This document shows positions 15,986 through 37,100 of a stretch of 64,000 nucleotides of DNA, in pieces. Source of the stretch: Mytilus edulis (lineage: Eukaryota); NCBI RefSeq assembly GCF_963676685.1, contig NC_092344.1:1116001-1180000 (forward strand). Reading direction: 5' to 3'. A program made the translations under genes and the position numbers. The number at the start of each line of letters is the position of its first letter. Position 1 is the stretch's first letter. The notes below the pieces were generated by a model. The model was not told the origin of the DNA. It searched no databases and saw only the letters and a program-made list of their open reading frames with translations.

Positions 15986-18286
15986 AGCAACACAATGGTA
16001 TGGATGGCAAGCTAAAATTGTGCATGAAAAAGAATTACTCTATACTTCAAAACATCATAATAATTACTATAGAATCTTTACCAGCTTACACAAGAAGTCA
16101 ATGTAATACAACATTTCAATTATAAAAAAACAAAATTTTCAAAAGAACATGTAGTTTCTAAGAAAAAAAAAACACCCAAGGAAACTTTTTTATCTAAATT
16201 ATTATTTTCAATGATGCACTTTCCTCACAGTGACACAAAAAAACAAATATTGTCTCAGGTTTAAATTCTAAGCTGAATGACTTAAATTGCATACACATTC
16301 AATTAAGAACGAAGTCCTCAAAATAATGAGTAGGTGAGCAATGATATAAATTTTTATAATCTAAGATTGCTCAGAGACCAATTGACAGTTTTGGAAACAA
16401 GTGGGTGCTATATTAGGTCCACAGGCTAAACAACCATCAGAGCAATCCCATACTTCTTACAATATAGAAAAAAATGCCCATACTGATTAGAATAGTAGGA
16501 ACGTGTACTAAACTTCAGGTATATGCATGCAGAGTTTAAATGCTGGATATATGCCACCTGCTTTACTGATAATGACTGAATTAAACAGTAAAAGCCTCTC
16601 AGATTCATTTTATTTTAGAAAAGGAAGTCTCTAAGATAAAGCACAGTAATGGTAAAATTGTAAGTTCTATTTTTGATTAGAATTTTCTGGCACACCACCT
16701 CAGGGTCAAGATTTTCTGGCTGTATTGAAGACCCATTGGTGGCCTTCTGCTGTTATCTGCTCTTTGGTCATGTTGTGGTCTCTATGACATATTCCCCATC
16801 TCCATTCTCATGTTGTGATCTCTATGACATATTCCCCATCTCCATTCTCATGTTGTTGTCTCTATGACATATTCCCCATCTCCATTCTCAATTTTCTTCG
16901 TAAATCAATGAAAAGATAACTTAGGCCTTTTACTTAAAATAAAGAGGGAAGGGGTGTATTTCATTGTAATGAAAAGTAAAAACCAGATGCTCCGCAGGGC
17001 GTACCTTTATACAACTGCAGAGGTCGAACCCTGACACAGTTGGGGCAAGTATGGACACAACATTTAAGCTTGATACAGCTCTGAATTTGATTGTGATTAA
17101 ATAGTGACACAATATAGGTTTCTGACACAGAATGAATGTGGTCTAAGAACTTAAACTTAAAAAATTGGACATTTACTTATTATGGTCCAATATCAAAAAT
17201 CTAAATACATGGTTAGATTTAGCATATCATAGAACCCCAAGAATTCAATTTTTGATGAAATCAAATAATGTTCAATTTTAGACCCTTTAGACCTCAATGT
17301 AGACCAATTTGATAATGGGGACCAAATATTAAAAATCTAAATACTTGATTTAGATTCAGCATATTGAATATCTAAATGTGCAATTAGATATTTCTTGCTA
17401 TTGTGCAATACAGTGATATGAAGATTTCTTGCTATTGCACAATAATGTGCAATTGAAGATTTCTTGCTATTGCACAATACTGTGCAATTAAAAATTTATT
17501 GCTATTGCACATTACTGTGCAATTGAAGATTTCTTGCTATTGCAGAATACTGTGCAATTGAAAATTTCTTGCTATTGCACAATACTTAATATAATAATTT
17601 TGGACCCTGATTTGGACCAACTTGAAAACTGGGCCCATAATCAAAAATCTAAGTACATGTTTAGATTCAGCATATCATATAACACCAAGAATTTAATTTT
17701 TGTTAAAATCAAGCTAAGTTTAATTTTGGACCCTTTGGACCTTAATGTAGACCAATTTGAAAACAGGACCAAAATTTAAGAATCTGAATACACGGTTAGA
17801 TTTGGCATATCAAAGAACCCCAATAATTCATTTTTTGATGAAATCAAACAAAGTTTATTTTTGGACCCTTTTGGCCCCTAATTGGTTGTGACCAAAACTA
17901 CCAAAATCAATCCAAACCACCTTTTTGTGGTCATAAACCTTGTGTTAAAATTTCATAGATTTTTATTCACTTATACTAAAGTTATTGTGCAAAAACCAAG
18001 AAAAATGCTTATTTGGGCCCTTTTTAGCTCCTAATTCTTAACAGTTGGAACCAAAACTCCCAAAACCAATCCCAACCTTCCTTTTGTAGTCATAGCCCTG
18101 TTTAAATTTCATAGATTTTTATTCACTTATACTAAAGTTATTGTGCAAAAACCAAGAAAAATGCTTATTTGGGCCCTTTTTAGCTCCTAATTCTTAACAG
18201 TTGGAACCAAAACTCCCAAAACCAATCCCAACCTTCCTTTTGTAGTCATAGCCCTGTTTAAATTTCATAGATTTCTCTTTACTTAT

Positions 18287-19006
18287 AACAACAACAACAA
18301 CAACAACAATACTTTATTTTAAGAGGGTTACACAGTTAGCTATATAACTAATCTTCCCTGAGGCCCTCGTAATGAAAAATCAAACAAAACACAAACATAT
18401 ACTAGTACATTGCATACATACATTAGCATAAAAAGTCAAGTGTGATAATAATGTTCAATACAACTTGATAAAATGTGATGAAAAAATAAACATGATGACA
18501 TGATCAGTTTTTTATATTATTTATACAGTTAGGTTGATTTCAATAAATGATCTGCTATTTTGTATTTGAAAGAATTAATATTTGTAATATTTCTTAACGG
18601 TATTGGCAAATTATTCCACAAGTATGGTCCAGAATACATAAAAGATTTTTTGAATAATTCTGTTTTTGGTTTAGGGAGTATGAGGTTTCCTTGAACAGCA
18701 TTTCTCAAGGGGTACGGATTTCTGTCTGAAACATAATGAAACTTGTTAGTAAGATATGATGGGGCATCATTATTAATACACTTAAATGTCATCACTAACT
18801 TATGATATTTTATTCTCTGTTCAACTGTCATCCAGTTTAAGTGTTTGAATAAGGGTGCAGAAGGAGCGAATGGGTCTGTTTCTAGTATTAATCTAGCAGC
18901 CCTCTTTTGTAATTTTAATATCCTTTTTAAACCCTCACTGCTACAACTACTCCACACTATACAACAATAATCAATAAGTGGCAAGATATAACCATTATAG
19001 AATAAT
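18287..19006 (-). mobile_element. 5'-truncated CR1/L2-group LINE (RT C-terminus, 3' UTR, AATAAA and (TTG)n tail)
   Basis: ORF LFYNGYILPLIDYCCIVWS..LKLQKRAARLIL..LNW..APSYL..KSFMYSGPYLWNNLP is a CR1/L2-type C-terminus. The tail reads (AAC)n on the plus strand at 18287-18309. Confidence 0.85.
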
Positions 19007-19008
19007 TA

Positions 19009-19841
19009 CCGTATTCGGCCGTGTATAGTACGCATTTATGTATAGTCCGCACCCCCTTTCCATCCCCTTAAAATCGAGAAAAAAAGTTTTTTTTACAATT
19101 TTTTTTTTTTTTTTTTTTTTTTAAAGCCTAGTTCAGTGTAAAAATCCATTGAAAGGGACCTATTCTCCATGTATTTTATAAAAAAAAAATGTTTTATTTA
19201 TTTCATGAAAAATAATGAAATGGTAGAACTTTTCATCAGGTAATTAAAATTAAATAATTTTATAAAAGTAGTTATTAATCAAAAGATCCTTGTTAAGATC
19301 AACCTTTGTCTAAGTATCTCCAAGCTGATATATAATATAACAAAAATAATTTGAATATTATGGAACAAAAGAAAAAAGAGATCAAACATTTCTCTAAATT
19401 AATTAGTTGTAATCAAAATGTTAAAACTATTTAATCTTATATAATCTTTTCATTGATCATGTTGTTTTTTTGCCTGGGATTATAATATTTAACACCTGTC
19501 AAAACTTGACATCAGTATTTAATTACTACACAACCATACTTAATCCTTAATTACCCCTCTTGATTACCTTTGCAGGATGTCACACCTTTACTTTGAATAA
19601 TCAATTTTGAAGAGAAAAGTTAAAAAAGAATAAAAGAATAAGAATTAAATGAAATAAATATAATAAACGTCTCCAATATACATTATTAATGCAGAAAAAA
19701 CGAAATTAAAAAAAAAAAAAAAAAAAAAAAAATTTTTATATAAAATTTCAAAAACCGTCTATAGTTGTGTATAATCCGCACCCCTTGTACAACCTACATA
19801 TTTAAAGAAAAAAAGTGCGGACTATACATGCCCAAATACGG
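19009..19841. mobile_element. Tc1/mariner-pogo-type MITE with TA TSD
   Basis: TA|CCGTATTCGGCCGTGTATAGTACGCA ... TGCGGACTATACATGCCCAAATACGG|TA. Confidence 0.8.
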
Positions 19842-22800
19842 TATACTAAAGTTATTGGGGGAAAACCAAGAAAAATGCTTATTTGGGCCCTTTTTGGCCC
19901 CTAATTCCTAAACTGTTGGGACCAAAACACTCAAAATCAATCTCAACCTTCCTTTTATGGTCATAAACCTTATGTTTAAATTTCATAGATTTCTATTTAC
20001 TTTTACTAAAGTTAGAGTGCGAAAACCAAATGTCTTCGGACGACGACGACGATGACGATGACGACGCCAATGTGATACCAATATACGACCAAAAAATTTT
20101 CAATTTTTGCGGTCATATAAAAACAGGTACTTTTAATGTGTTCAGTGTAATCTATTTCAAAATAAGTATTATTGCATTACAAATGAGGACTTAAGTGTAA
20201 ACGTTTTTAGACAGATCTGTTCCTGCACTTGGCAAAGAATGTTTATTCAATATGCATAAGTTGCATTGTTAATTACAAACAAATTTAAGTTATGAAAAGT
20301 CAACATAAAGCATTTCTTAGGCTGTAAAAGCTGCCACAAAAACATTTCACTTCCATTTAATCCTCAATCAAACAGAAACATAAGTTACTATGTACATAAA
20401 TATCTCCAGTTAATTGAAGCCATCTTGGTATTTATTAGCTTAATTATTTTTTTGTTATTTCATACTATGTACATACACTTATTGTAAATATCTGCAAGTA
20501 AGATGAAATAAAATTTTCTTGATCAATTAAAAAAAATAATTATAAAATTATATAATTTGCACTTCTAGAACGAAACAAGCCCAGTATAATTTGTACTGAG
20601 CTTAACATCAGAGGCATTGGGTGCACTTGATTACTTGGCAATTCATTTTAACCTCTGTACATATTCCCAAGAAAGATCAGACATGACAAAATTTCATTAT
20701 TTGTTTAATATGACTCTGATAGCATCAAGCAAGTGTCATCATTGATGAGTAACAAGGTCAAATAGAAGAAAGCAAACCAATGATAGAAATACATTACTTG
20801 TATTTCAATTTCACCACTTTTGTGCATACTTAATGCAGTCACTTATGTTTGCAAGAATAAACTCAGAAATTAAAGACCCTTTAGTGAGCAAGCACATGTA
20901 TCCCACACCTACACATAAGAATAGGAATTGTTCATGAATAGTAACCTGCTTGCTTAGTTTTTGTCTACCTACATCAGGTATGAATCTGATATGAAATATT
21001 TGAGTTAGGACTGACATATGGGTCAAAATCTATATAACCAACCCCATTCAGATACATTTGGATCAGTAAATCATTCTTTTTAAAAAGAAAAGACAGTCTT
21101 CTGCATATTATCCAGAGAGGGATTAAGGAGGAGGCGGGGAACAGGGGGCCTGAGTCCCCTCTTTTGTGTGATACATTTGGTTGATTATATAGGGAATCGC
21201 TGAAACATGACTGGAGCGGGCCCCCACTTTTGGATTCGCCACTGACATATGTTGAACAAGTTTGTTCAAACTGTTTGGTCCAGTAATGGATTACAATATG
21301 GGATAAAATGTCCATTTAAAAATAATATTTAGAATTGATGTTTTTCTATTTTCTTTCCCCAAAGACCCTCACAATAACATTGTTTATCAATATAATGCCT
21401 GATTATCCTACACTATTACAGTTTCCAATTCATTACCAATATAATCTTTGCATCTATCTAACATCTACAGGAAATTAAGTGATTTTTCTTAATAACTGGA
21501 GGACATTTTCCTGTAAATGTCAGCTATGTTCATTATTTCTAGGACATTGCTTTCTCAGCATTATTTGCTTGTTTGCCTTCTGTCAATCTTAGAGTTAATC
21601 TTACTACCCTAGGTTATAACCAGGAGCCTAAAAAGTGATTTTGGTTTATGTAAAATTACAAATTATCTTGCTTTTGTGATTACTTTAAGATAGGGTTGTT
21701 TTCGTTTATGATTTCAGCCATCAATATAGTGTGTCACCTTAAATACAAAAATCTTTTTTTTAATTAACTATGACCTTAACCTTAGACATAGTGACTTTGT
21801 GATCATAGAAATAGCTGTACCAGTGAAGAAATATGTAATAATAATGTAAATAATATTGTTGTTGAATAAAAAAAAAAAGACTTTGTAATCAATAATGATC
21901 TTATTATTATATGAGACCATATATGCAAGTAAGGTTGCAAACTCATATGCAGTACTTCACATAAATTTAGAAATGACTTCTCTACACAAATTTCAGTCTA
22001 ATTTAGAAGCTTTGACCTTCACCTTTGATAGATGATCTCAATATCAATATGGATCTTCTCACTATATGCGACCATTAATAAGTAAAGTTGCCATCCCATA
22101 TGAAATTAGTCAGTTTTTAGAATGAAAATGACCGTGGGCATTCAAAATCCAAAGGGATCTTTCGCTAAGTTAATGTGACCATATTATAAAGTATGGTTGC
22201 TGTCCTATATTTGTATTGTATTTTTAGCAGCCTGAAACCCATTTTTTCATAACTTTTTGTGTAGATTTAGTCATTTTAACCTTGACCTTAGACATAGTGA
22301 CCTGGGATCTACTCATAACTGAACATTACCTTGCAGAATTGTCTCCCTTGATACACATCCTTATACTATCATTCATGTCAACAGTTACAGGTAATAAAAC
22401 AATAAACTAGTTATAACTCCAGTATACTTACAAAAGTACAAAAACATGGAACACTATAAACCATTCATCGTTAAATCTTAGAATTAATAAAAATATCTGT
22501 TGTACTCCAATTACTGCTCATGAAAAAAACACCCAACTATTACGTTAAACTTGATAAACTAAGTAATCACTCAGCAAAAAACTAAAACAACTGTTTCATA
22601 TAGCTGTACATAGCATCCTTAAAGACTGTAAAACTCATTAGTTGAGCTGTCTTAAGAGTACAGTAATTAGGTCAGACGTCTTACCGTCAATGTCACCCCT
22701 GTCATGTAGGGGTTTGTGATGTATGCCTATTTACCTTTCAGCTCATTTAATCTTTAGTGGAGATGATCAGATAACACATGTTCTGACAGATTAGTATCAG

Positions 22801-23624
22801 CACTGTCTACATCTTCTGCAGTATCAATCAAACTAAACCTAGGTGTCTATCATTTATATTACATGTATAGGCAGATTTAGGGGGAGGGGTAGATGGGAAA
22901 CATTTGGTTCATTATTAAGGAAATCACTTAAGCAAGACTGGAAGTGGCCCCATCTTAGGAAGTCTGTTAGCACCATTTATTAAAATTTTTGGATGTGCCA
23001 CTGTATATTTTGTAAATAGTTTCTATTATTGCCTGAAGGCTTAATTCATTCTTCCCATTAAGGTCTTTCCACTATGTTAGGAAAAACCTTATTGTTTTTT
23101 TTCTAATTTTTACATAAATCACATACAAGAAACAATCCAAAAATTTAACTGTTTTCAAAGATTTTTTTAAAAGAATATAATAACTTAATAGTTAAAGACA
23201 TCTAACATCCTAACACAAGGTCATTGAAGGACATATGTGAAGAGAATAGAAACAGAAGTGGGTTATAAAATGTTTTTACTGGGAGATCAATACAAGTTTA
23301 TAAAACACAAATAAATAATGTATTGTAACTGGCCTATAAACTTCCTGACAACAATAAATGTTCATACTTCTGTTGTACTGGTGAACCTCTTAATCACAAA
23401 GTGTTCTACTCAATATAACAATACAACTTCATGCCAAGTACATAATGTATATTGGATATTGGTTTTCAAAGACTTGAAGATAAATATAGCCTACATAGAA
23501 TTAGAGAACCAGAATGTTTTTGTCATTTAGGGTATTTGGTATTGATGGCAGTGGACAATATTAGACTTTTAGCAATTATTGCAATGAATCCCATTTTCAT
23601 GACATTGGTTAATTGATTGTGTTT

Positions 23625-24778
23625 AACACATGTCTCCATCCCTGGCTATTCAGGGCGGTTTTTATTGGTATAAGAAGCATCATGCCCAGAGAGAACCACC
23701 ACCACATGTTTCACCATCCCTGGCTATTCAGGGCGGTTTTTATTGGTATAAGAAGCATCATGCCCAGAGAGAACCACCAACACATGTTTCACCATCCCTG
23801 GCTATTCAGGGCGGTTTTTATTGGTATAAGAAGCATCATGCCCAGAGAGAACCACCAACACATGTCTCCATCCCTGGCTATTCAGGGCGGTTTTTATTGG
23901 TATAAGAAGCATCATGCCCAGAGAGAACCACTAACACATGTTTCACCATCCCTGGCTATTCAGGGCGGTTTTTATTGGTATAAGAAGCATCATGCCCAGA
24001 GAGAACCACCAACACATGTCTCCATCCCTGGCTATTCAGGGCGGTTTTTATTGGTATAAGAAGCATCATGCCCAGAGAGAACCACCAACACATGTCTCCA
24101 TCCCTGGCTATTCAGGGCGGTTTTTATTGGTATAAGAAGCATCATGCCCAGAGAGAACCACCAACACATGTCTCCATCCCTGGCTATTCAGGGCGGTTTT
24201 TATTGGTATAAGAAGCATCATGCCCAGAGAGAACCACCAACACATGTCTCCATCCCTGGCTATTCAGGGCGGTTTTTATTGGTATAAGAAGCATCATGCC
24301 CAGAGAGAACCACCAACACATGTCTCCATCCCTGGCTATTCAGGGCGGTTTTTATTGGTATAAGAAGCATCATGCCCAGAGAGAACCACCAACAAATGTC
24401 TCCATCCCTGGCTATTCAGGGCGGTTTTTATTGGTATAAGAAGCATCATGCCCAGAGAGAACCACCAACACATGTCTCCATCCCTGGCTATTCAGGGCGG
24501 TTTTTATTGGTATAAGAAGCATCATGCCCAGAGAGAACCACCAACACATGTTTCACCATCCCTGGCTATTCAGGGCGGTTTTTATTGGTATAAGAAGCAT
24601 CATGCCCAGAGAGAACCACCAACACATGTTTCACCATCCCTGGCTATTCAGGGCGGTTTTTATTGGTATAAGAAGCATCATGCCCAGAGAGAACCACCAA
24701 CACATGTCTCCATCCCTGGCTATTCAGGGCGGTTTTTATTGGTATAAGAAGCATCATGCCCAGAAAGAACCACTAACC
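23625..24778. repeat. Highly homogeneous 76/78-bp minisatellite (~15 copies), apparently derived from the SINE 3' region
   Basis: Unit AACACATGT(CT/TTCA)CCATCCCTGGCTATTCAGGGCGGTTTTTATTGGTATAAGAAGCATCATGCCCAGAGAGAACCACC. The ORFs here only reflect the repeat. Confidence 0.95.
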
Positions 24779-26067
24779 TATTCTAATAACTATGGAGCAC
24801 ATAATCAATCTTCAAATTCATAGCATAATCATGGACAAAGAAGTTTTGGTTCAACCATTCAAAGGAAACATGGAAATCCAAGTTAATTACGACATTAAAG
24901 ATTTTTACAATTGTAGATCCAGTTAGCTACTATTTAAAATATTCAGTATTTCTTTAATAGCTACTATTTTGGCAAGCAATGTTGATGTCACTTATGTCAG
25001 CTTCTTTTTTTTTAATTCTCAAAATTGACATTTATGAATCCAATATGTTCCTTTTAACAAAAGAATGTTTAACAACCGTCACTCAGACATTCCCAACAGT
25101 GCTAAAATGAACATGCTTTTAAAGAAGTCATGAAATTAGAGAATTTTTTTACACCATAATATATCATGAAGATCTTGCATTAAAAAATATACACCTTTCA
25201 ATATAACTTCAATTGATATAAGTGCATTAAAGATAACTTTACAACAATGTTTTCCCCATTTCTTTACAAAAAAACTATCCCATTATAATGTTGTAACTCA
25301 TATATAACAAAACATTTCCATTCTACAAGTGAATCAAACTTCTTAATAATCAAGTGTTATAACTTTCTACTGTTTTACTTATCGGGTTTATATTAAGACC
25401 AGGAAATATAAATATTTTCGTTCAGCAACAAAACATTGATTATTACAAGCAGCAGCATACCAACTTATAAATATTACTACCATTTTATATGCCTGCTATT
25501 TTATTGTTTAACGAGCAGACAGAAAGATGAATTTCTTAGATTCTTTCCTCTATGTATTGTCTAGTAAGTTTAGTATTGGGAATTCATCAACGTTTCTCAC
25601 TTCTAGAGAAAGTTTATCAAAATAATAATCAATGAATTACTAACACCATGAACATAAAAACCTTGTTCCAAATAAAAGAATTAACTATAGATATATATAT
25701 ATACTTTTGACATATCAAATGTATGTAATGGTAGTTAATAAAAGATATTGTCAAAAGACAAATTAAGAGAAAAAATATTACTTCTGTAGAACTGGACAGG
25801 ATAAAACTTTACTCATTCTAAGTATTTCTTTATTTGAAAGAAAGAAAAATTCTGCACAATTTTTAAAGTGCCAATTAAACAAAAGTTTAAAGAGGAAAAT
25901 CAATGGTGGTATATTACTCATCAAGTTACGCGACTTGAAACACAATGGCGGCTCATTATCTGGAACCCTGTCACTGTTTTCAGGTGCAACAATATGAAAA
26001 TGGGTTGTCTAATGTCATTTAGCAATTCAAATTACCAAATGAAAGACCACTTCAACATATCAAAGCC

Positions 26068-29613: not shown

Positions 29614-29706
29614 TAAATGTAAAAAAACATCATTTTGTTGTATTATCTGAAGGCTTGTTTTTTGCTAGCATCAATGCTCTTTCCAAAACCCTAATGTAAA
29701 GTATGC

Positions 29707-29983
29707 AACTACCAGCAAAGGCATCATGTGTTCCCAAGGTCAAGACTACCAGCAAAGGCGTCATGTGTTCCCAAGGTCAAGACTAACAGCAAAGACGTCA
29801 TGTGTTCCCAAGGTCAAGACTACCAGCAAAGGCGTCATGTGTTCCCAAGGTCAAGACTACCAGCAAAGGCGTCGTGTGTTCCCAAGGTTTAGACTACCAG
29901 CAAAGGCGTCATGTGTTTCCAAGGTCAAGACTACCAGCAAAGGTGTCATGTGTTCCCAAGGTCAAGACTACCAGTAAAGGCGT
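29707..29983. repeat. 37-bp minisatellite, left part (interrupted by the BEL element)
   Basis: Unit GACTACCAGCAAAGGCGTCATGTGTTCCCAAGGTCAA, ~7.5 copies. Confidence 0.95.
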
Positions 29984-30155
29984 TGTTCAGGACTGTGTTT
30001 ATTAGACGTTCGCGGTACCGCTATGTATGTATTGTAACGTCACGCTACTTATGACGTTGAGATTTATGTGCAAGATGAGCTTAGAATCATTACAAGTAGA
30101 AACAGCTAGTATTTCTTATTGTGCCTAACAAGTCTTATAATACCACTCTAAGATA
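29984..30155 (+). repeat. 5' LTR (172 bp)
   Basis: TGTTCAGG...CTCTAAGATA followed by T and the PBS-like TGGTGCCGAAGGACCAAGAT, which overlaps the gag ATG (30175). Confidence 0.9.
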
Positions 30156-30174
30156 TTGGTGCCGAAGGACCAAG

Positions 30175-30252
30175 ATGAGTTCCAAACTACGTTCGATATG
30201 TGCAGGACACAGAAGTGTTATTTCCCGACTTTTGAAGAAATTTGAGGACATC
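30175..30252 (+). pseudogene. BEL gag N-terminal stub (MSSKLRSICAGHRSVISRLLKKFEDI), cut by the inversion
   Basis: ATG immediately follows the PBS. The RxGHR-type N-terminus is typical of BEL/Pao gag. Confidence 0.7.
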
Positions 30253-30267
30253 CTGGTCACGGCACCA
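30250..30267 (-). other. Exact 18-nt complement of the tRNA-His 3' end (TGGTGCCGTGACCAGGAT) attached to the 3' LTR
   Basis: Plus strand reads ATCCTGGTCACGGCACCA, CCA end included. It differs from the 5' PBS at 30157-30176. Confidence 0.8.
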
Positions 30268-30268
30268 A

Positions 30269-30440
30269 TATCTTAGAGTGGTATTATAAGACTTGTTAGG
30301 CACAATAAGAAATACTAGCTGTTTCTACTTGTAATGATTCTAAGCTCATCTTGCACATAAATCTCAACGTCATAAGTAGCGTGACGTTACAATACATACA
30401 TAGCGGTACCGCGAACGTCTAATAAACACAGTCCTGAACA
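30269..30440 (-). repeat. 3' LTR (172 bp), inverted; identical to the 5' LTR
   Basis: Base-by-base reverse complement of 29984-30155. On the minus strand it is preceded by the PPT-position sequence GCGGGCCCCCAGGA and the integrase 3' region. Confidence 0.92.
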
Positions 30441-30563
30441 TCCTGGGGGCCCGCGAATGATAATTTAAGCAATAAATAAAGAAAATTTCTTAAAATGAAA
30501 TAACTATTGTCTCTCAAATGAAATAAAACTGTAACTATTTAACTATTTACACTTAAACAGTCT

Positions 30564-31975
30564 TTATGTTTTACGGAACGGTTGAATCCAACTTTTGATT
30601 TTCTCCTTGGCATCAGTTTTTGCTTTTCTAGTAATAGTATTGTCACTAGAATCACACGGACTATCTGTTGATAAGAGTTCAAGTGGATATAGCTTACTTA
30701 TCGGTCTAGATGTCGTACCATTTTTAGTGCGTAAAATGGCAGACCTACAAAGTCCATCTCTCCCATAAACTAACTTAACGATAATCGCTATATTCCACAC
30801 TGTCCTTGGGGTATCATCATGAATCTGTACAATGTCGCCCACTTTAATGATTTGGGTGTTATTTCCGGTGTTTCTATGTTGTTCCCTGAGTGAAGTGAGA
30901 TATTCTCGTCTCCATCTGTTCCAGAAGTCGTGAATAATGCGTTTTTGAACACTAGATTGTCTATTTGCTGTGTAATGTGTTAAGTTTTGTACGTTCTCCT
31001 CACTGTTGAAATTAATTGTTCCTGAATACGGTAAAGTTTTAATCCGTCTCCCATAGAGAAGATGAGACGGTGTAAGCGGTTCATCATCGGTAAGGTCCGT
31101 TGATACGTGGGTTAACGGACGATCATTTAATATAGCCTCTATCTCGGTCACAATTGTCTCTAGCACTCTAAAAGTAACTATTGCTCGTCCTAACACTTTC
31201 TTTATGCAATTCTTGGTCAAGCCGATCAATCGCTCCCACCAACCACCATACCATGGTGCACGCTTCAGAATAAATTTCCACTGAGTTCCATATATGTTGA
31301 GTTGTTCCTGAATAGTAGTAGATTTTGTAAGCATTTCAATTTCCTTCGCTGCTGCGGTATATGTTGTACAATTGTCAGACATCATGATTTTTGGTAACGA
31401 TTTGCGGCTGGTGAATCTCCTAAACGCTAGAATGAATGTTTGTTCTGTAAGGTCTTCAACGATTTCCAAATGCACAGCTCTAGTGTTAGCGCAGGTGAAT
31501 AGACAAATATATGCTTTACTAATACTGTTGCTTTTTGTTCTCACATTCAATGCTCCTGTGAAGTCGACACCGGTTACGGTAAACGGTGGTGAATCATTAA
31601 GTCTGTCGGACGGCAGTGGTGGTGGTTCGGGTGTTAGATAGGGTCTTCCTGTAATTTTACGGCAAGTAACGCAATTACGGAGTATTGATTTCACACATTG
31701 TCGAATCGACGGAATCCAGTAAGACTGGCGAATAAATGTCACTGTACTTTCTAATCCACAGTGAAAATTCCTTGCGTGTGCATCCATAACAATTAATTTA
31801 CAAAGTCTGTCTTTGTTCGGTATTAGGACTGGAAATTTAGCTGATTTATCAATAGGTGCATTGTTAATTCTCCCGCCACAACGGATAATGTTCATGCTGT
31901 CTATGTACAATCTAAGTTGCTTCACTAGCGCATTTTTCTCTGATTTGTTGTTAAAACTCTCAATAACATCCGGGT
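30564..31975 (-). CDS. BEL/Pao integrase (C-terminal part of pol; 5'-truncated at the rearrangement junction)
   Basis: HHCC zinc finger (DAHARNFHCG...CVTC), DDE core (GVDFTG, MSDNCT, WWERLIG) and the BEL C-terminal domain (FWNRWRREYL...SRPISKLYPLE). The frame is uninterrupted. Confidence 0.92.
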
Positions 31976-33926
31976 TCAATACAAATGCAAAAGATTTCGT
32001 TAGTTATAGCGGCCCTTCTCATTCCGCCCCTGCTCAGCCCACTCATAATCAACAAAGTTATGCTCAGTCCGCTCATGATCAACAAAGTTATGCTCAACCC
32101 GGGAGATACACTAAACAGAATACATGTAATTCAAACTTCCGTGAACCGGAAACTCAGTTTTCACGTAGTAACACTAGAATAAATGAGTACAACAAGTTGC
32201 CCAAATTGAATCTTCCTACCTTTGATGGTAATATTATGCAGTGGCAGTCATTTTGGGATTCATACGAGATATCCGTTCACGAAAACACTACTCTTGGAAA
32301 TGTTCAGAAATTTAATTATTTGAAGTCACTACTCCATGATGAGGCATTGAAAACCGTCACAGGGTTTGCGCTTACACATGCAAATTATGAGAAAGCTATT
32401 TCTTTACTGCAAGAAAGATATGGACAATCGCATGTAATAAGACAGAAGTATATGCAAGCACTAGTGGATATACCAGCCCCTAAATACACGATATCTAGCA
32501 TGAAAAACTTCTACGATGAAATTGAGATACACATTAGAGGTTTGGAGTCATTAGGTCAAAGTGAAGACACATACGGAGCGTTTTTAGTGCCCATTATTAT
32601 GAACAAACTACCCGGTGAAATCCGCAGAAATCTTGCCAGACAATATAGATCTACAGATTTATAACTGAATGAATTACGCCGTGGAATTTTCGATGAACTT
32701 TATATTATGGATGCAGGAAAAACTTCAGAACAGTTAGAACCCCCTACAGCTACCGCCGCCTTTCTGACAAATTCTAGTAATCGAAATAGAGGTAACAAGA
32801 ATACAAACGCAAGTAACACTAAACCCAAGCCACACTGTGCGTACTGTAAGGAGCCACACTCGTCTGTTAATTGCACTAAAGTATCTGATTACAATGGCCG
32901 AATGTCAATCGTGAAAAAAGACCGCTTATGCTTTAACTGTCTAGGACACCATAGCTTATCCGCATGTAAATCTACAAAAACTTGCAACAAGTGTCACAAA
33001 CGTCATCACACCAGCATTTGCAAAGACAATGTTAAAACAAATGAAGACAACAAACCAACAGGGGATGTAAGCGTAGGCACAATTCAACACAACGCGGAGG
33101 AACCAGACATTGTTTTACACTCACAATCGCCAGATCGTGTACTTTTGAAGACAGCAATTAACCCAGTAAGTGCAGAACATGAAATACTTGATGCAAAAAT
33201 ATTGTTTGATGAAGGCGCACAGCGGTCATTTATCACAGAGGAATTAGCCGAGAAATTGAAACTCAAGCCTACTGGAACTGAAAGCGTTAACCTATCCGGA
33301 TTTGGAGACAATGCAAATAGTACTAAAATTCGCCATTTGAGAACAGGATTGGTATATCTCATAACTACAGATGGTAAACTGCCGATTCGAGTCTTGATCG
33401 TTCCAGAGATCGCAGCACCGATGAGAACCTATGTACGCCAAGCAGCAAAACTTACATATTTGTTAGGAATCAAATTAGCTCACCCAGTAACAGCAGATGA
33501 AAACTTTGAAATTTCTATTCTAATTGGAGCTGATTACTTCTGGTCAATTGTTCAGAATGATATTATCCGAGGCGAAGGACCGACAGCTGTTCAATCAAAA
33601 ATCGGATACTTGTTGTCTGGAACGCTACATTCACACAACTCTGACACAGATGGATACAAGAGAGCTTCAATGATGAACGTGATGATCGCAACAAAAACCG
33701 ATGAGTACGACTTGGAGAAATTTTGGAAAATAGAGTCACTGGCCACCGAGAAAATTGACACCACAAAGTTAGAAGAACAGATAGATATTCAAAAGACTTA
33801 TGAAGAGAAACAAATTCGTTACCATGACAACAGATATTTTGTAACGTTACCATGGAAAGAGGATCACCCTACGTTACCGACAAATAAAGCCATTGCACAA
33901 CGAAGAACAGAAAATGTAGTAAGAAG
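31976..33926 (+). pseudogene. BEL/Pao gag-protease-start of pol with one in-frame stop (TAA 32662-32664)
   Basis: KLPKLNLPTFDGNIMQWQSFWD gag domain; zinc knuckles CAYCKEPHSSVNC, CFNCLGHHSLSAC and CNKCHKRHHTSIC; protease LFDEGAQRSFIT; then LEKFWKIES..YFVTLPWK. ORFs 31813-32664 and 32707-33930 are in the same frame. Confidence 0.9.
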
Positions 33927-34147
33927 GTAAAGACTACCAGCAAAGGTGCCATGTGTTCCAAAGGTAAAGACTACCAGCAAAGGCGTCATGTGTTCCCAAG
34001 GTAAACCCTACCAGCAAAGGCATCATGTGTTCCCAAGGTGAAAACCAGTAGAGGCATCATGAGTTCCCAAGGTAAAGACTACCAGTAGAAGCCTCATGTG
34101 TTCCCAAGGTGAAGACTACCAGCAGAAGCGTCATGTGTTCCCAAGGC
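33924..34147. repeat. 37-bp minisatellite, right part
   Basis: Same unit as 29707-29983, with GGTAAAG/GGTGAAG variants; ~6 copies that decay to the right. Confidence 0.9.
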
Positions 34148-37100
34148 TAAGTAATTTATCACCTAAAGAAAAGACAGACTTCTATGGTATCTTTTATGTC
34201 TTATTAAGTAGATGTTTGTCATCAAAATGATTCTTGTCCGTCATTAGCCACATAAACTATCAGACTGCCTTCAAGTCTTACAAAATATGTATTCCTGTCT
34301 ACATAAGCTATTAGTCTGTCAACCCAGACTCCCAGTAAGAAGTTATATGTCATCAAACAATTAATGGCTAGTCTCAGTTTAGAGTTTTTCAATTAAATCA
34401 GCTGAAATCAATAAATAAATAAATACCAGCTTACCCTCATTATTTTAAGATGGTTTTGAAGCCACCCTATACAGCTAAGACAATTGTAATTTAAAGTTGA
34501 TTTCTTTTTGTTAATACATGTTGTTTTACTGAACATTACATGTATATGCAAATAAAATGAAGTAGGGTGGTAATCTGAATATACTTATGATAGAAAACAA
34601 GCAAGCCATTGTGTTTCTACCAGAGATTATTAACAGGAACATTGGCACATCTAAGTGGGGTCATCTCATTAATCCAGGAGGAGTGTAGTATCAAAGTAAA
34701 CATACACCCAGTACAAACCATAATCTAGAGATTAGGCAGATTAAGAGCCAGATATAGGGGATGTCTTATCAACATAAAACGTAAGCTAAAATCAATGCAC
34801 AATTCTTTATCTCCCTTAACAAATAAAATCTGCATACGATGACAGATTGAAACACACTAATGCAACTGCTTCAAAGACTTGTTTTACAATGCATCAAAAT
34901 ATAACCATTGAGTGCTAATCTAACAAAATGCTATAAAACTCAAATTTCTTAATAGACTTGTACAAATAGTTAACATATAAAGTTATATAATTTATTTGAG
35001 TTGATGCTTTGAAGCCCAAACCTCCTTTAAAAAAATAATTCATATATTCAATGTGTTATTTCTGCATTTGATAAGTTTTAGTCTTTCGTCTTTTTATTAT
35101 ACCAGTAATAGCATTTTCATCCCACATCTAAAAAACACTTAATGGAAAATAATCTCTTAGTAGATATAGGAAGATGTGACCAATATGGCAAAATGGACAG
35201 ATATTTAGTTAAGCACTGTTAAATCCTTATTTAGTCTGTATGTAAAAAAGAATAAAATTTAAATCATTTTATCTACTTAAAGATCTTTATTTTTGCTGCT
35301 TGGAGACAGGAAAGTTGTTTACCTTATTAAAATCCCTAAGTTGTAACATTGTTGACCATGTATTTTCACAGCAATTACCAGTACAGTAGACAATATTCTG
35401 TATCTGACAGTTGAATTATTGTTCTGTACAACAAAATAAAGATCTTCTGAATTGAAATGTTAAGATTATTGTGAAGTAATCCTGTATCATATACAGATGT
35501 TTTCTGTCAGGATTTAACTAAAAACCAACAACAAATTAATCACAAATTCACAAATTTAAAACAGCTCATTTTGTTGTCAGCATGCAGTTAATTAAAAGAA
35601 TTACTTTCAATAAATAATTTCACTTTATTAATCTATGTTTTGAAAGCTTAAAATTGTATAAAAAAAAATTCAGAACTGATTAGAAGAATATATCTAATGG
35701 AAAAAAGGGTTACAATGGTACAAAAACATCCCTACATACATTTGACATAACACACAGTAAAAGAACTTCACTTTAAATGAGAAATTTTGTATTTTGATGG
35801 TCACTTTATACTGAGCACAGTACATCCAAAATAAAAGTATGGCATGCTGAATTGTTGATTTTTTTGTCATGTGTTCCAGTGCAGCAATTGTTAGTTAAAC
35901 CAGGGTTTCATATTCAGAGTTCCACGTACCCAACTAAGTCAGTCACCAAGTGCATCATTGTCCAGGTACCCAACTAAGTCAGTCACCAAGTGCGTCATTG
36001 TCATTCAGAGAATTTGTCCATTGTGTGATCAGGGGCATCAGACAGTTCAGTTACTTATAGCAACTCCGTCAGGCTATTGTTACTCAATCTTAGAGGTCAT
36101 CATTATTCCCCAAGCAACTTTGCTAAGTTTTTCATCTTAAAATTAAATAATACATGATTCTTGTCTAGAGAGACAATCTAAGATTGGTCATAATTTGTTG
36201 GTCATCAGACAATCCTTTTACAGTACATGTAATAAATCATTGCACTTTAATATTAGTCATATCTATATACATATATACTGCAGTAAGGTTGATTAATATC
36301 TATTGTTCCCAATAGTCCACTCAATTCTTATAACTACTTTTTATTACAAACATGGGAATTGTAAAAATTGACTGCACTGGTCAGTTTCTAAATGACATTT
36401 GCATTAAGAAGACTCCTTTGGTCTCTTATGGAGAGTTGTCTCATTGGCAATCATACCACATCTTCTTTTTTAAATTCCTAATAGCATAACTGAATTTTTC
36501 AAAATATAATTTTTCACTAAGAATACCACCATTAGGAAATTGCAAGTTTAAAAAAACATTTTTCAAAACATGTACTTTTTTACCTAGACGAAATCTGAAA
36601 TTTGACTAAATTTGATGCATTATTAATGCATCATATCATGCATATTAATGATTATGCTTTAAACTTTTCAATTCAGCTGCTTTGAGTTTATTATTAAGGT
36701 CTTTCCCCTAGGTTAGGAAAGACCTTATCGTTTTTATAATTTTAAATACATTACTACTAAGCATGAACTTCCTTCATATTCAATTAACACTTCATGCCAA
36801 AATGCAATTTGCTAAAACATTAAAAAATAGATATTCACATTTTTTTTTTGTCTTAAAAACAATTTTTAACATGTAATGATGGGAGGTTAGATGGCTTTTA
36901 ATTATTTCTATATCAAAGACTGTGTTCACACTTAAAACCTGGTGGGACGTACTGTTTATGATATTAAATACATAATTTATCAATTATTTTCTGGTAAATT
37001 TCCCATTATAATAGCAGGAAATTTGACTCCTAATAAAACACTACAAAGGAAGAACTTGGTCTCCAAACAATTTAACCTTAAATTAGTTATACATATTGGT

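What the first reader, a model, noticed from the sequence alone, without database searches (positions are those of the whole stretch)
30157..30268. Fossilised reverse-transcription intermediate: an 18-nt tRNA-His copy on the 3' LTR that differs from the element's own PBS
Seen in sequence: the 5' LTR is followed by TGGTGCCGAAGGACCAAGAT. The inverted 3' LTR, which should end the element, is followed by TGGTGCCGTGACCAGGAT, 18 nt including the CCA complement. Established: plus-strand strong-stop synthesis copies the 3' 18 nt of the tRNA primer and stops at m1A58, and TGGTGCCGTGAC.. is the tRNA-His-type PBS. Inference: this end is a tRNA-templated extension that failed to transfer to the mismatched PBS and was instead joined into the element's own gag, possibly through ATC(C) microhomology. 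It would be direct genomic evidence of the primer used by a BEL element with a bulged PBS.
Basis: partly seen in the sequence, partly recalled or inferred. Interest (0 to 1): 0.85.

Follow-up and report, generated by a model that had tools for sequence, protein, structure and literature searches.

The report
Retrotransposon end carrying a tRNA-His copy
A rearranged BEL/Pao retrotransposon copy has an inverted 3' LTR followed by exactly the last 18 bases of the host's tRNA-His, most likely a trapped reverse-transcription intermediate, but that 18-mer is also the normal primer site of close relatives and no reads confirm the junction.

Summary
A 172-nt LTR (29984-30155) is followed by a bulged primer-binding site (PBS) and 77 nt of gag. 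Then comes an inverted block: 18 nt identical to the host tRNA-His 3' end, an identical LTR, the 3' UTR and the integrase end. The host tRNA-His(GTG) gene plus CCA matches 30250-30267 exactly, and the match stops one base before A58.

Five full-length family copies carry this perfect His PBS, and the window's internal pieces group with them. So "differs from the element's own PBS" proves nothing by itself, and "failed transfer to a mismatched PBS" is unsupported.

What still favours a plus-strand strong-stop-type end is this: a 3' LTR contiguous with integrase carries a PBS at all, and it breaks exactly at nt 18/19, with (C)ATCC microhomology. Both LTR arms share two private substitutions, which points to one source.

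A separate and firmer result: one perfect-His copy is nested among bulged-PBS copies (AU p=0.008). This indicates that the PBS was restored from the tRNA.

The junction is unique in the assembly, but no sequencing run confirmed it. The closest precedent is yeast Ty1 cDNA intermediates captured at chromosome breaks. Interest is moderate.

The parts
29671..29983 (.). Left flank: 37-nt tandem array into which the element is inserted
   Evidence: the repeat finder family D2. No homology to full-length family copies.
29984..30155 (+). 5' LTR, 172 nt, with a precise TGTT... terminus abutting the array
   Evidence: Matches both LTRs of full-length copies. Limits come from copies with 5-bp TSDs. Carries private bases at LTR positions 17 and 97.
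30157..30176 (+). Bulged PBS (type A): the tRNA-His PBS with a 2-nt insertion and 2 substitutions. Preceded by the 1-nt spacer T at 30156.
   Evidence: Only family copies carry it and no tRNA gene matches it. Predicted duplex with the tRNA-His 3' end is -23.7 kcal/mol, against -36.9 for the perfect PBS.
30175..30253 (+). Start of gag (the ATG overlaps the last 2 nt of the PBS). Family-collinear up to 30253.
   Evidence: 17 other copies align through query position 270, which is window 30253. Junction alignment.
30250..30267 (-). 18 nt identical on the + strand to host tRNA-His nt 59-76 including CCA. On the - strand this is a perfect PBS attached to a 3' LTR. 30250-30253 (ATCC) is shared with gag.
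   Evidence: Identity to L039 tRNA gene + CCA. Junction. The junction sequence is unique in the genome.
30269..30440 (-). Inverted 3' LTR, identical to the 5' LTR. The spacer base is at 30268.
   Evidence: Inverted repeat I1, 100%. Shares both private substitutions, which are absent from 28 other LTRs.
30441..31975 (-). 3' UTR (30441-30563) and integrase C-terminal coding region (30564-31975), contiguous with the inverted LTR
   Evidence: blastn to full-length copies at about 97-98%. Pfam Integrase_H2C2 and DUF5641. The sequence upstream of the LTR matches that of intact copies.
31960..31975 (.). Second junction: antisense integrase joined to sense gag inside an imperfect 13/14-nt similarity. 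About 207 nt of gag are missing between this point and 30253.
   Evidence: Overlapping blastn alignments. Three-way comparison.
31976..33926 (+). gag (DUF1759) and protease (DUF1758) segment, collinear with family copies. RT and RNase H are missing.
   Evidence: Groups with the His-PBS copies.
33927..34150 (.). Right flank: the same 37-nt tandem array, joined to internal element sequence. 3-nt AAG overlap, no LTR, no TSD.

Best explanation
The 18-mer at 30250-30267 is the tail that reverse transcriptase adds when plus-sense DNA synthesis runs off the 5' end of minus-strand DNA into the still-attached tRNA-His primer. That synthesis stops at A59, one base before A58. This is the chemistry that makes plus-strand strong-stop DNA.

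The tail did not pair with the minus-strand PBS. Instead its last 4 nt (GGAT-3') paired with ATCC in sense gag, 77 nt beyond the PBS. The resulting join placed an inverted block (integrase end, 3' UTR, 3' LTR, 18 nt) inside gag.

Only about 207 nt of gag are lost between the two flanks of the inverted block, so the event looks like an insertion or a template-switch excursion. I favour an excursion during one reverse-transcription event, with later loss of the right-hand part (or a one-ended integration) into a 37-nt satellite.

Shown: the anatomy, the tRNA identity, the microhomologies and the shared private LTR bases. Inferred: that the tail was copied from tRNA, the order of events, and the m1A58 block itself.
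For: 1. A PBS does not belong after a 3' LTR. The 9 other family LTRs seen as 3' or solo ends (L022-L030) run straight into host flank, and the 7 full-length copies with a 3' LTR that were checked do so through a 5-bp TSD.
2. The inverted LTR is contiguous with the 3' UTR and integrase. The donor therefore had the order IN-LTR-PBS. That order exists only in reverse-transcription intermediates, LTR circles or tandem elements.
3. The donor breaks at nt 18/19 of the PBS. This is exactly tRNA-His nt 59-76 and is where (+)ssDNA synthesis ends before m1A58 in retroviruses (PMC11251516). A random breakpoint in a 5.9-kb element would fall there with a chance of about 3 in 10,000.
4. The terminal 4 nt of that tail form the microhomology, as expected for a free 3' end.
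5. Both LTR arms are identical and share two substitutions absent from 28 other LTRs. This fits one source RNA or one event.
6. The gag flanks on the two sides of the inverted block lie only about 207 nt apart in the family element.
7. [quoted passage not shown]
Against: - The perfect His PBS is the ordinary PBS of 5 full-length relatives. The window's internal pieces belong with those copies: 7/7 and 5/5 diagnostic sites and AU p=0.00085 against grouping with bulged copies. The 18-mer could therefore have been copied from a relative's RNA or DNA rather than from tRNA.
- The base after the PBS (G) is also shared, so a 5-nt CATCC overlap with such a donor fits equally well.
- No read or contig from four runs shows this copy's private bases or its junction. 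The structure rests on the assembly alone.
- Three unusual junctions need at least two steps in any model.
- The identity of the LTR arms could also come from gene conversion within the palindrome.
Confidence: 0.55

Rival explanations
1. The donor end is the same (a reverse-transcription intermediate with the 18-nt tail), but the route differs. A resident, normally integrated copy with the bulged PBS suffered a break in gag. The break was patched by end-joining with a cDNA fragment running from the integrase region to the 3' LTR plus tail. A second deletion then removed the right-hand part. This is a variant nested within the best explanation, not an independent alternative.
For: - It explains the near-contiguity of the gag flanks (207 nt lost) and the microhomologies at both ends.
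- It matches the yeast Ty1 capture events, which carry cDNA-only nucleotides (PMC11372161, citing Moore & Haber 1996 and Yu & Gabriel 1999).
- It explains naturally why the 5' PBS is the chromosomal, bulged form.
Against: The captured LTR shares two private substitutions with the resident LTR. The cDNA would therefore have to come from this very copy and land in it, or the arms were later homogenised.
Confidence: 0.2
2. The 18-mer is not tRNA-templated. It is the ordinary His PBS of a related copy, taken from that copy's RNA, a 1-LTR circle or a tandem element, and joined to gag by illegitimate recombination or mispriming through the 5-nt CATCC overlap. On this view the break at the PBS boundary is chance.
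For: - Five full-length copies carry this PBS followed by G.
- The inverted integrase piece has the His-cluster state at 5/5 diagnostic sites.
- The 5-nt overlap is as good as the 4-nt one.
Against: - The breakpoint must fall within 1-2 nt of the PBS end in a 5.9-kb element.
- No tandem or circle-derived copy of the family was seen among 41 matches.
- The inverted LTR is identical to the 5' LTR, including private bases, whereas every other LTR compared differs from it by 3 or more substitutions, these two private bases included.
Confidence: 0.25
3. The inverted junction is an assembly or library chimera.
For: - No run confirms it. At 12 sites where this copy differs from the family, none of the 128 read observations in raw run X23 carries its base. 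Contigs of X2, X6 and X3 lack those bases too.
- No run holds more than 0.66 of the stretch's words.
Against: - A chimera would also have to break exactly at the PBS end.
- The two arms carry mirrored private substitutions, which errors would not produce.
- X23 was sampled at only about 1.4x and may come from another individual. A young insertion may be private to the assembled animal.
Confidence: 0.08

Closest known systems
Capture of Ty1 cDNA replication intermediates at chromosomal double-strand breaks in yeast (Moore & Haber 1996; Teng et al. 1996; Yu & Gabriel 1999, as cited in PMC11372161)
   Same: A 3' LTR-containing cDNA fragment carries extra nucleotides that exist only in cDNA. It is joined by microhomology, without integrase processing and without a TSD.
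   Different: Here it is a natural germline fossil in an animal BEL/Pao element. It is inserted, inverted, into a copy of the same family with an identical LTR. The route (break capture or template switch inside the particle) is not known.
Retroviral plus-strand strong-stop DNA terminating before m1A58 of the primer tRNA (HIV-1, HTLV-1; PMC11251516)
   Same: The tail is exactly nt 59-76 of the cognate host tRNA, attached to U5 through the normal spacer.
   Different: It is inferred from one genomic junction, not measured. The m1A58 status of this host's tRNA-His is unknown.
[quoted passage not shown]
   Same: The family has a mutated (bulged) PBS that is passed on through many copies. It also has copies in which the exact tRNA complement has reappeared.
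   Different: This is an observational phylogenetic pattern in BEL/Pao. Recombination between co-packaged RNAs cannot be fully excluded.
Retroviral autointegration
   Same: An LTR end is joined into the element's own interior and produces an inversion.
   Different: Autointegration joins the processed LTR terminus. Here 19 extra nt (spacer + PBS) remain, so integrase did not make this join.

Membership tests
BEL/Pao LTR retrotransposon | gag DUF1759, protease DUF1758, RT with the Pao Peptidase_A17 region, RNase H, integrase with H2C2 zinc finger and DUF5641 | tested here: met
   Window: DUF1759 (2e-42), DUF1758, Integrase_H2C2 and DUF5641 (4e-19). Full-length copy L031 adds RVT_1 and Peptidase_A17 (3e-39); RT_RNaseH and rve matched only below Pfam's cut-offs.
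BEL/Pao LTR retrotransposon | Direct LTRs, short TSD, tRNA-complementary PBS next to the 5' LTR | tested here: met
   Family copies have 172-173-nt LTRs, most pairs identical or nearly so, and all but one of the 10 checked have a matching 5-bp TSD; elements are about 5.9 kb. The PBS is complementary to tRNA-His. The window copy itself lacks a direct 3' LTR and a TSD.
Plus-strand strong-stop-type cDNA end | A 3' LTR contiguous with pol/PPT, followed by a PBS | tested here: met
   The 9 other family LTRs seen as 3' or solo ends (L022-L030) run into host flank instead.
Plus-strand strong-stop-type cDNA end | The tail equals the host primer tRNA 3' end including CCA and stops before position 58 | tested here: met
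   18/18 identity to tRNA-His(GTG)+CCA, nt 59-76. The preceding tRNA base is A58. The junction lies at nt 18 or 19.
Plus-strand strong-stop-type cDNA end | The tail can be distinguished from a PBS copied from an element genome | tested here: not met
   The same 18 nt are the normal PBS of 5 full-length relatives. The next base (G) is also compatible.
Plus-strand strong-stop-type cDNA end | m1A58 present in the host tRNA-His | not testable with these tools
   Needs tRNA modification mapping.
cDNA capture / non-integrase joining | Microhomology at junctions, unprocessed LTR end, no TSD | tested here: met
   ATCC/CATCC at 30250-30253, an imperfect 13/14-nt similarity at 31960-31975, and AAG at 33926. 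The array phase shows a loss of 14 (+37n) nt rather than a 5-bp duplication.
Autointegration product | The processed LTR terminus itself is joined to internal sequence | tested here: not met
   19 nt (spacer + PBS) lie between the LTR end and gag.

The most novel reading that the evidence does not exclude
In this BEL/Pao family the primer tRNA sequence is inherited only in a minority of transpositions. A bulged PBS therefore persists across many copies, while the exact tRNA-His complement is restored repeatedly. The window copy preserves both products of one reverse-transcription event side by side: the RNA-derived bulged PBS and the tRNA-derived perfect tail. This would be a natural record of PBS inheritance and of an A59 stop (implying m1A58) outside retroviruses and yeast Ty elements.
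Probability: 0.35. Interest if true: 0.6.

Novelty: new member of a known kind. Interest (0 to 1): 0.45.

Why it matters
Reverse-transcription intermediates are normally seen only in biochemical experiments. A genomic junction that keeps the 18-nt tRNA copy on a 3' LTR would show two things for a poorly studied superfamily (BEL/Pao, in an invertebrate). First, plus-strand synthesis copies the tRNA primer and stops where retroviral synthesis does. Second, such intermediates can end up in the germline.

The family-wide PBS polymorphism is more robust. One perfect-His copy is nested among bulged copies. This offers a natural test of whether the tRNA sequence is inherited, a point on which retroviruses and yeast Ty1 differ.

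Limits: the evidence is one locus, unconfirmed by reads, and the underlying chemistry is textbook.

Tried and rejected
- Another tRNA as primer for the bulged PBS: rejected. The complement of the bulged PBS occurs 14 times in the genome. Thirteen of these coincide with family copies; the fourteenth (C2:81756126) lies in a stretch with no long match to the family. None is a tRNA gene.
- Simple fold-back copying of the 5' end: rejected. The inverted arm continues into 3' UTR and integrase, not into the left flank.
- Nested normal insertion of a second element, and autointegration: rejected. The LTR end keeps the spacer and PBS.
- More 3' LTR+PBS fossils of this family: none found. Exact LTR-end+His-PBS hits not followed by gag (C2:90014069, C13:42010286) turned out to be other families with different LTRs.
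- Read confirmation: one read-laying run was allowed. X23 was sampled at about 3% (about 1.4x), and Logan contigs break in repeats. No spanning evidence for or against was obtained, and no run shows this copy's private bases.
Two small fetches still worked.
- Lauermann & Boeke 1994 and 1997 could not be read. They are cited only through the reference list of PMC5371799.
- Literature search for tRNA-His use by BEL/Pao gave nothing usable.
L031 served only as a coordinate ruler.

Full report
**1. What is there**

The window holds a perfect 181-nt inverted repeat, 29984-30164 against 30260-30440, with 95 nt between the arms. I compared it with full-length family copies elsewhere in the same genome. 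The LTR is 172 nt (29984-30155). It is followed by a 1-nt spacer and then the PBS.

Using the 5.9-kb copy L031 only as a ruler, blastn maps the window as follows:
- 29984-30253 (+): 5' LTR, PBS and the first 77 nt of gag.
- 30250-31975 (-): PBS, 3' LTR, 3' UTR and the integrase C-terminus.
- 31960-33926 (+): gag and protease.
- About 207 nt of gag, and the whole RT/RNase H region, are missing.

Both outer sides are a 37-nt tandem array. The left end is a precise LTR terminus. The right end is internal element sequence joined to the array through a 3-nt overlap, with no TSD.

Pfam shows DUF1759, DUF1758, Integrase_H2C2 and DUF5641 in the window. L031 adds RVT_1 and Peptidase_A17 above the cut-offs, with weaker RT_RNaseH and rve matches. 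The family is BEL/Pao.

**2.

- The 5' LTR is followed by the 20-nt bulged PBS (30157-30176).
- The inverted LTR is followed, on the minus strand, by TGGTGCCGTGACCAGGAT.
- On the plus strand, 30250-30267 is identical to the last 15 nt of the host tRNA-His(GTG) gene plus CCA. These are tRNA positions 59-76, and the base before them is A58.
- About 200 copies of that tRNA 3' end lie in an 820-bp tandem array on another contig.
- Family gag sequence runs to 30253 and the inverted piece begins at 30250. ATCC is therefore shared, or CATCC if the donor continued with the G that follows the PBS in normal copies.
- The junction sequence occurs once in the 1.37-Gb assembly.

**3. The family PBS is polymorphic**

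Among copies with a 5' LTR there are three PBS types:
- Perfect His PBS directly before the gag ATG: five copies.
- Bulged type A: six family copies including the window; one search counts a seventh exact match, at C2:81756126, that is not in a recognisable family copy.
- Bulged type T: seven exact copies, plus one variant with an extra G.

No tRNA gene matches the bulged forms. They are mutated His sites that can still form 16-17 pairs with the tRNA. Predicted duplex energies are -24.9 and -23.7 kcal/mol, against -36.9 for the perfect site.

Copies of all three types are bona fide insertions. They have 5-bp TSDs and identical or nearly identical LTR pairs.

The perfect 18-mer is a normal PBS in this family.

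**4. PBS type does not follow descent**

A maximum-likelihood tree of the internal regions gives two well-supported clades.

In the type-T clade, the perfect-His copy L055 is nested among bulged copies (100/99 support). Forcing the bulged copies together without it is rejected (AU p=0.008; the group was named after seeing the tree). L055 keeps clade-T marker bases 17 nt upstream and 19 nt downstream of the PBS.

A precise loss of the 2-nt insertion together with a back-substitution, restoring the exact tRNA complement, is best explained by copying from the tRNA primer. A double template switch within about 40 nt is the alternative. An older relative (L021) and other families (L060, L061) have unbulged His sites, so the bulge is derived.

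In the other clade, the window's gag-PR and integrase pieces carry the His-cluster base at 7/7 and 5/5 diagnostic sites. Grouping the window's gag-PR piece with the type-A copies is rejected (p=0.00085). Yet its 5' PBS is type A.

So either the bulged state persists in that lineage and is lost repeatedly, or the 5' end has another origin.

**5. Why I still read the 18-mer as a reverse-transcription tail**

Four arguments support this reading:
- A PBS after a 3' LTR that is contiguous with integrase requires a donor with the order IN-LTR-PBS. That order exists only in reverse-transcription intermediates, LTR circles or tandems. No tandem copy was seen among 41 matches.
- The donor ends at nt 18/19 of the PBS. 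This is where plus-sense synthesis stops on the tRNA primer in retroviruses (PMC11251516). By chance the odds are about 3 in 10,000 for one breakpoint. They stay under 1 in 100 after allowing for five breakpoints and several landmarks.
- The last 4 nt of the tail form the microhomology, as expected for a free 3' end.
- Both LTR arms are identical and share two substitutions (LTR positions 17 and 97) found in none of 28 other LTRs. This fits one source.

The two gag flanks of the inverted block are only about 207 nt apart. That suggests an insertion or a template-switch excursion rather than a random scramble.

The second junction lies in an imperfect 13/14-nt similarity that keeps the integrase-side version. 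This is the pattern of a homology-guided switch by a strand moving left to right on the plus strand.

I cannot decide between an excursion inside the particle and capture of a cDNA fragment at a break in a resident copy. Yeast gives a direct precedent for the second route: Ty1 3' LTR fragments with cDNA-only nucleotides at repaired breaks (PMC11372161).

**6. What weakens it**

- The 18-mer could have been copied from the RNA or DNA of a His-type relative, which is the lineage of the window's own internal pieces. The 5-nt overlap fits that equally well.
- No data outside the assembly support the junction. I counted 12 sites where this copy differs from the family. At those sites, none of the 128 read observations in run X23 (about 1.4x sampled) carries its base. 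Contigs of three other runs lack those bases too.
- No run holds more than 0.66 of the stretch's words.
- The likeliest reason is that the copy is private to the assembled animal, which would fit the identical arms. An artefact cannot be excluded, although mirrored private bases in the two arms argue against one.

**7. Verdict**

The tRNA-His match and the strong-stop-like end are real features.

The claim that the difference between the two PBSs shows tRNA templating does not hold. Neither does the claim that a mismatch caused a failed transfer.

The firmer result is the family-level evidence that tRNA-His is the primer and that its sequence can be re-inherited.

Earlier scan notes on the same stretch describe the fold-back (s1-832473) and a one-ended scrambled cDNA with three junctions (s1-832552). 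My mapping agrees with both descriptions.

Noticed in passing
L039:1-3020 (G000:C6:40134597-40137616) and C6:40.13-40.26 Mb: About 200 exact copies of the tRNA-His 3' end sit in a tandem array with an 820-bp period. In L039 one unit is an intact tRNA-His(GTG) (62 bits). The neighbouring unit has a replaced 5' acceptor/D-arm and scores only 30 bits.
   Followed up: partly
window 30175-30177 and family copies: The gag ATG overlaps the last two bases of the PBS (…GGATGAGTTCC), so the PBS and the start codon constrain each other.
   Followed up: no
window 29984-30440: The perfect 181-nt inverted repeat with a 95-nt spacer would fold into a long hairpin if transcribed. I did not test that.
   Followed up: no
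L060 (G000:C2:90013900-90014300), L061 (G000:C13:42010100-42010500): Other LTR families with unrelated LTR bodies end in the same …CAAGATAT plus the perfect tRNA-His PBS. About 20 further near-exact hits (CGATAT…/TGATAT…) suggest that several families here use tRNA-His.
   Followed up: partly
L047 (G000:C14:67383800-67393300): A full-length His-PBS copy is followed, 1.4 kb on, by a second copy of its last 1.2 kb plus the 3' LTR. Both LTR copies are followed by the same host flank, so this is a local segmental duplication.
   Followed up: no
window 23547-24844: Tandem array of about 14 units of 76-78 nt.
   Followed up: no
window 17184-20029: Several interleaved repeat families (35-nt tandem units, 156-nt direct repeats).
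   Followed up: no
window 31976-32101: This stretch of gag aligns to family copies with a shift of about 30 nt (alignments overlap at 32031-32101). It is poorly covered by reads at 97% likeness or more, so gag has a variable short duplication here.
   Followed up: no
L056, L057 (G000:C2:81750000-81762500): An exact match to the type-A bulged PBS lies at C2:81756126. The surrounding 7 kb shows no long match to the family, so this may be a very short fragment.
   Followed up: partly
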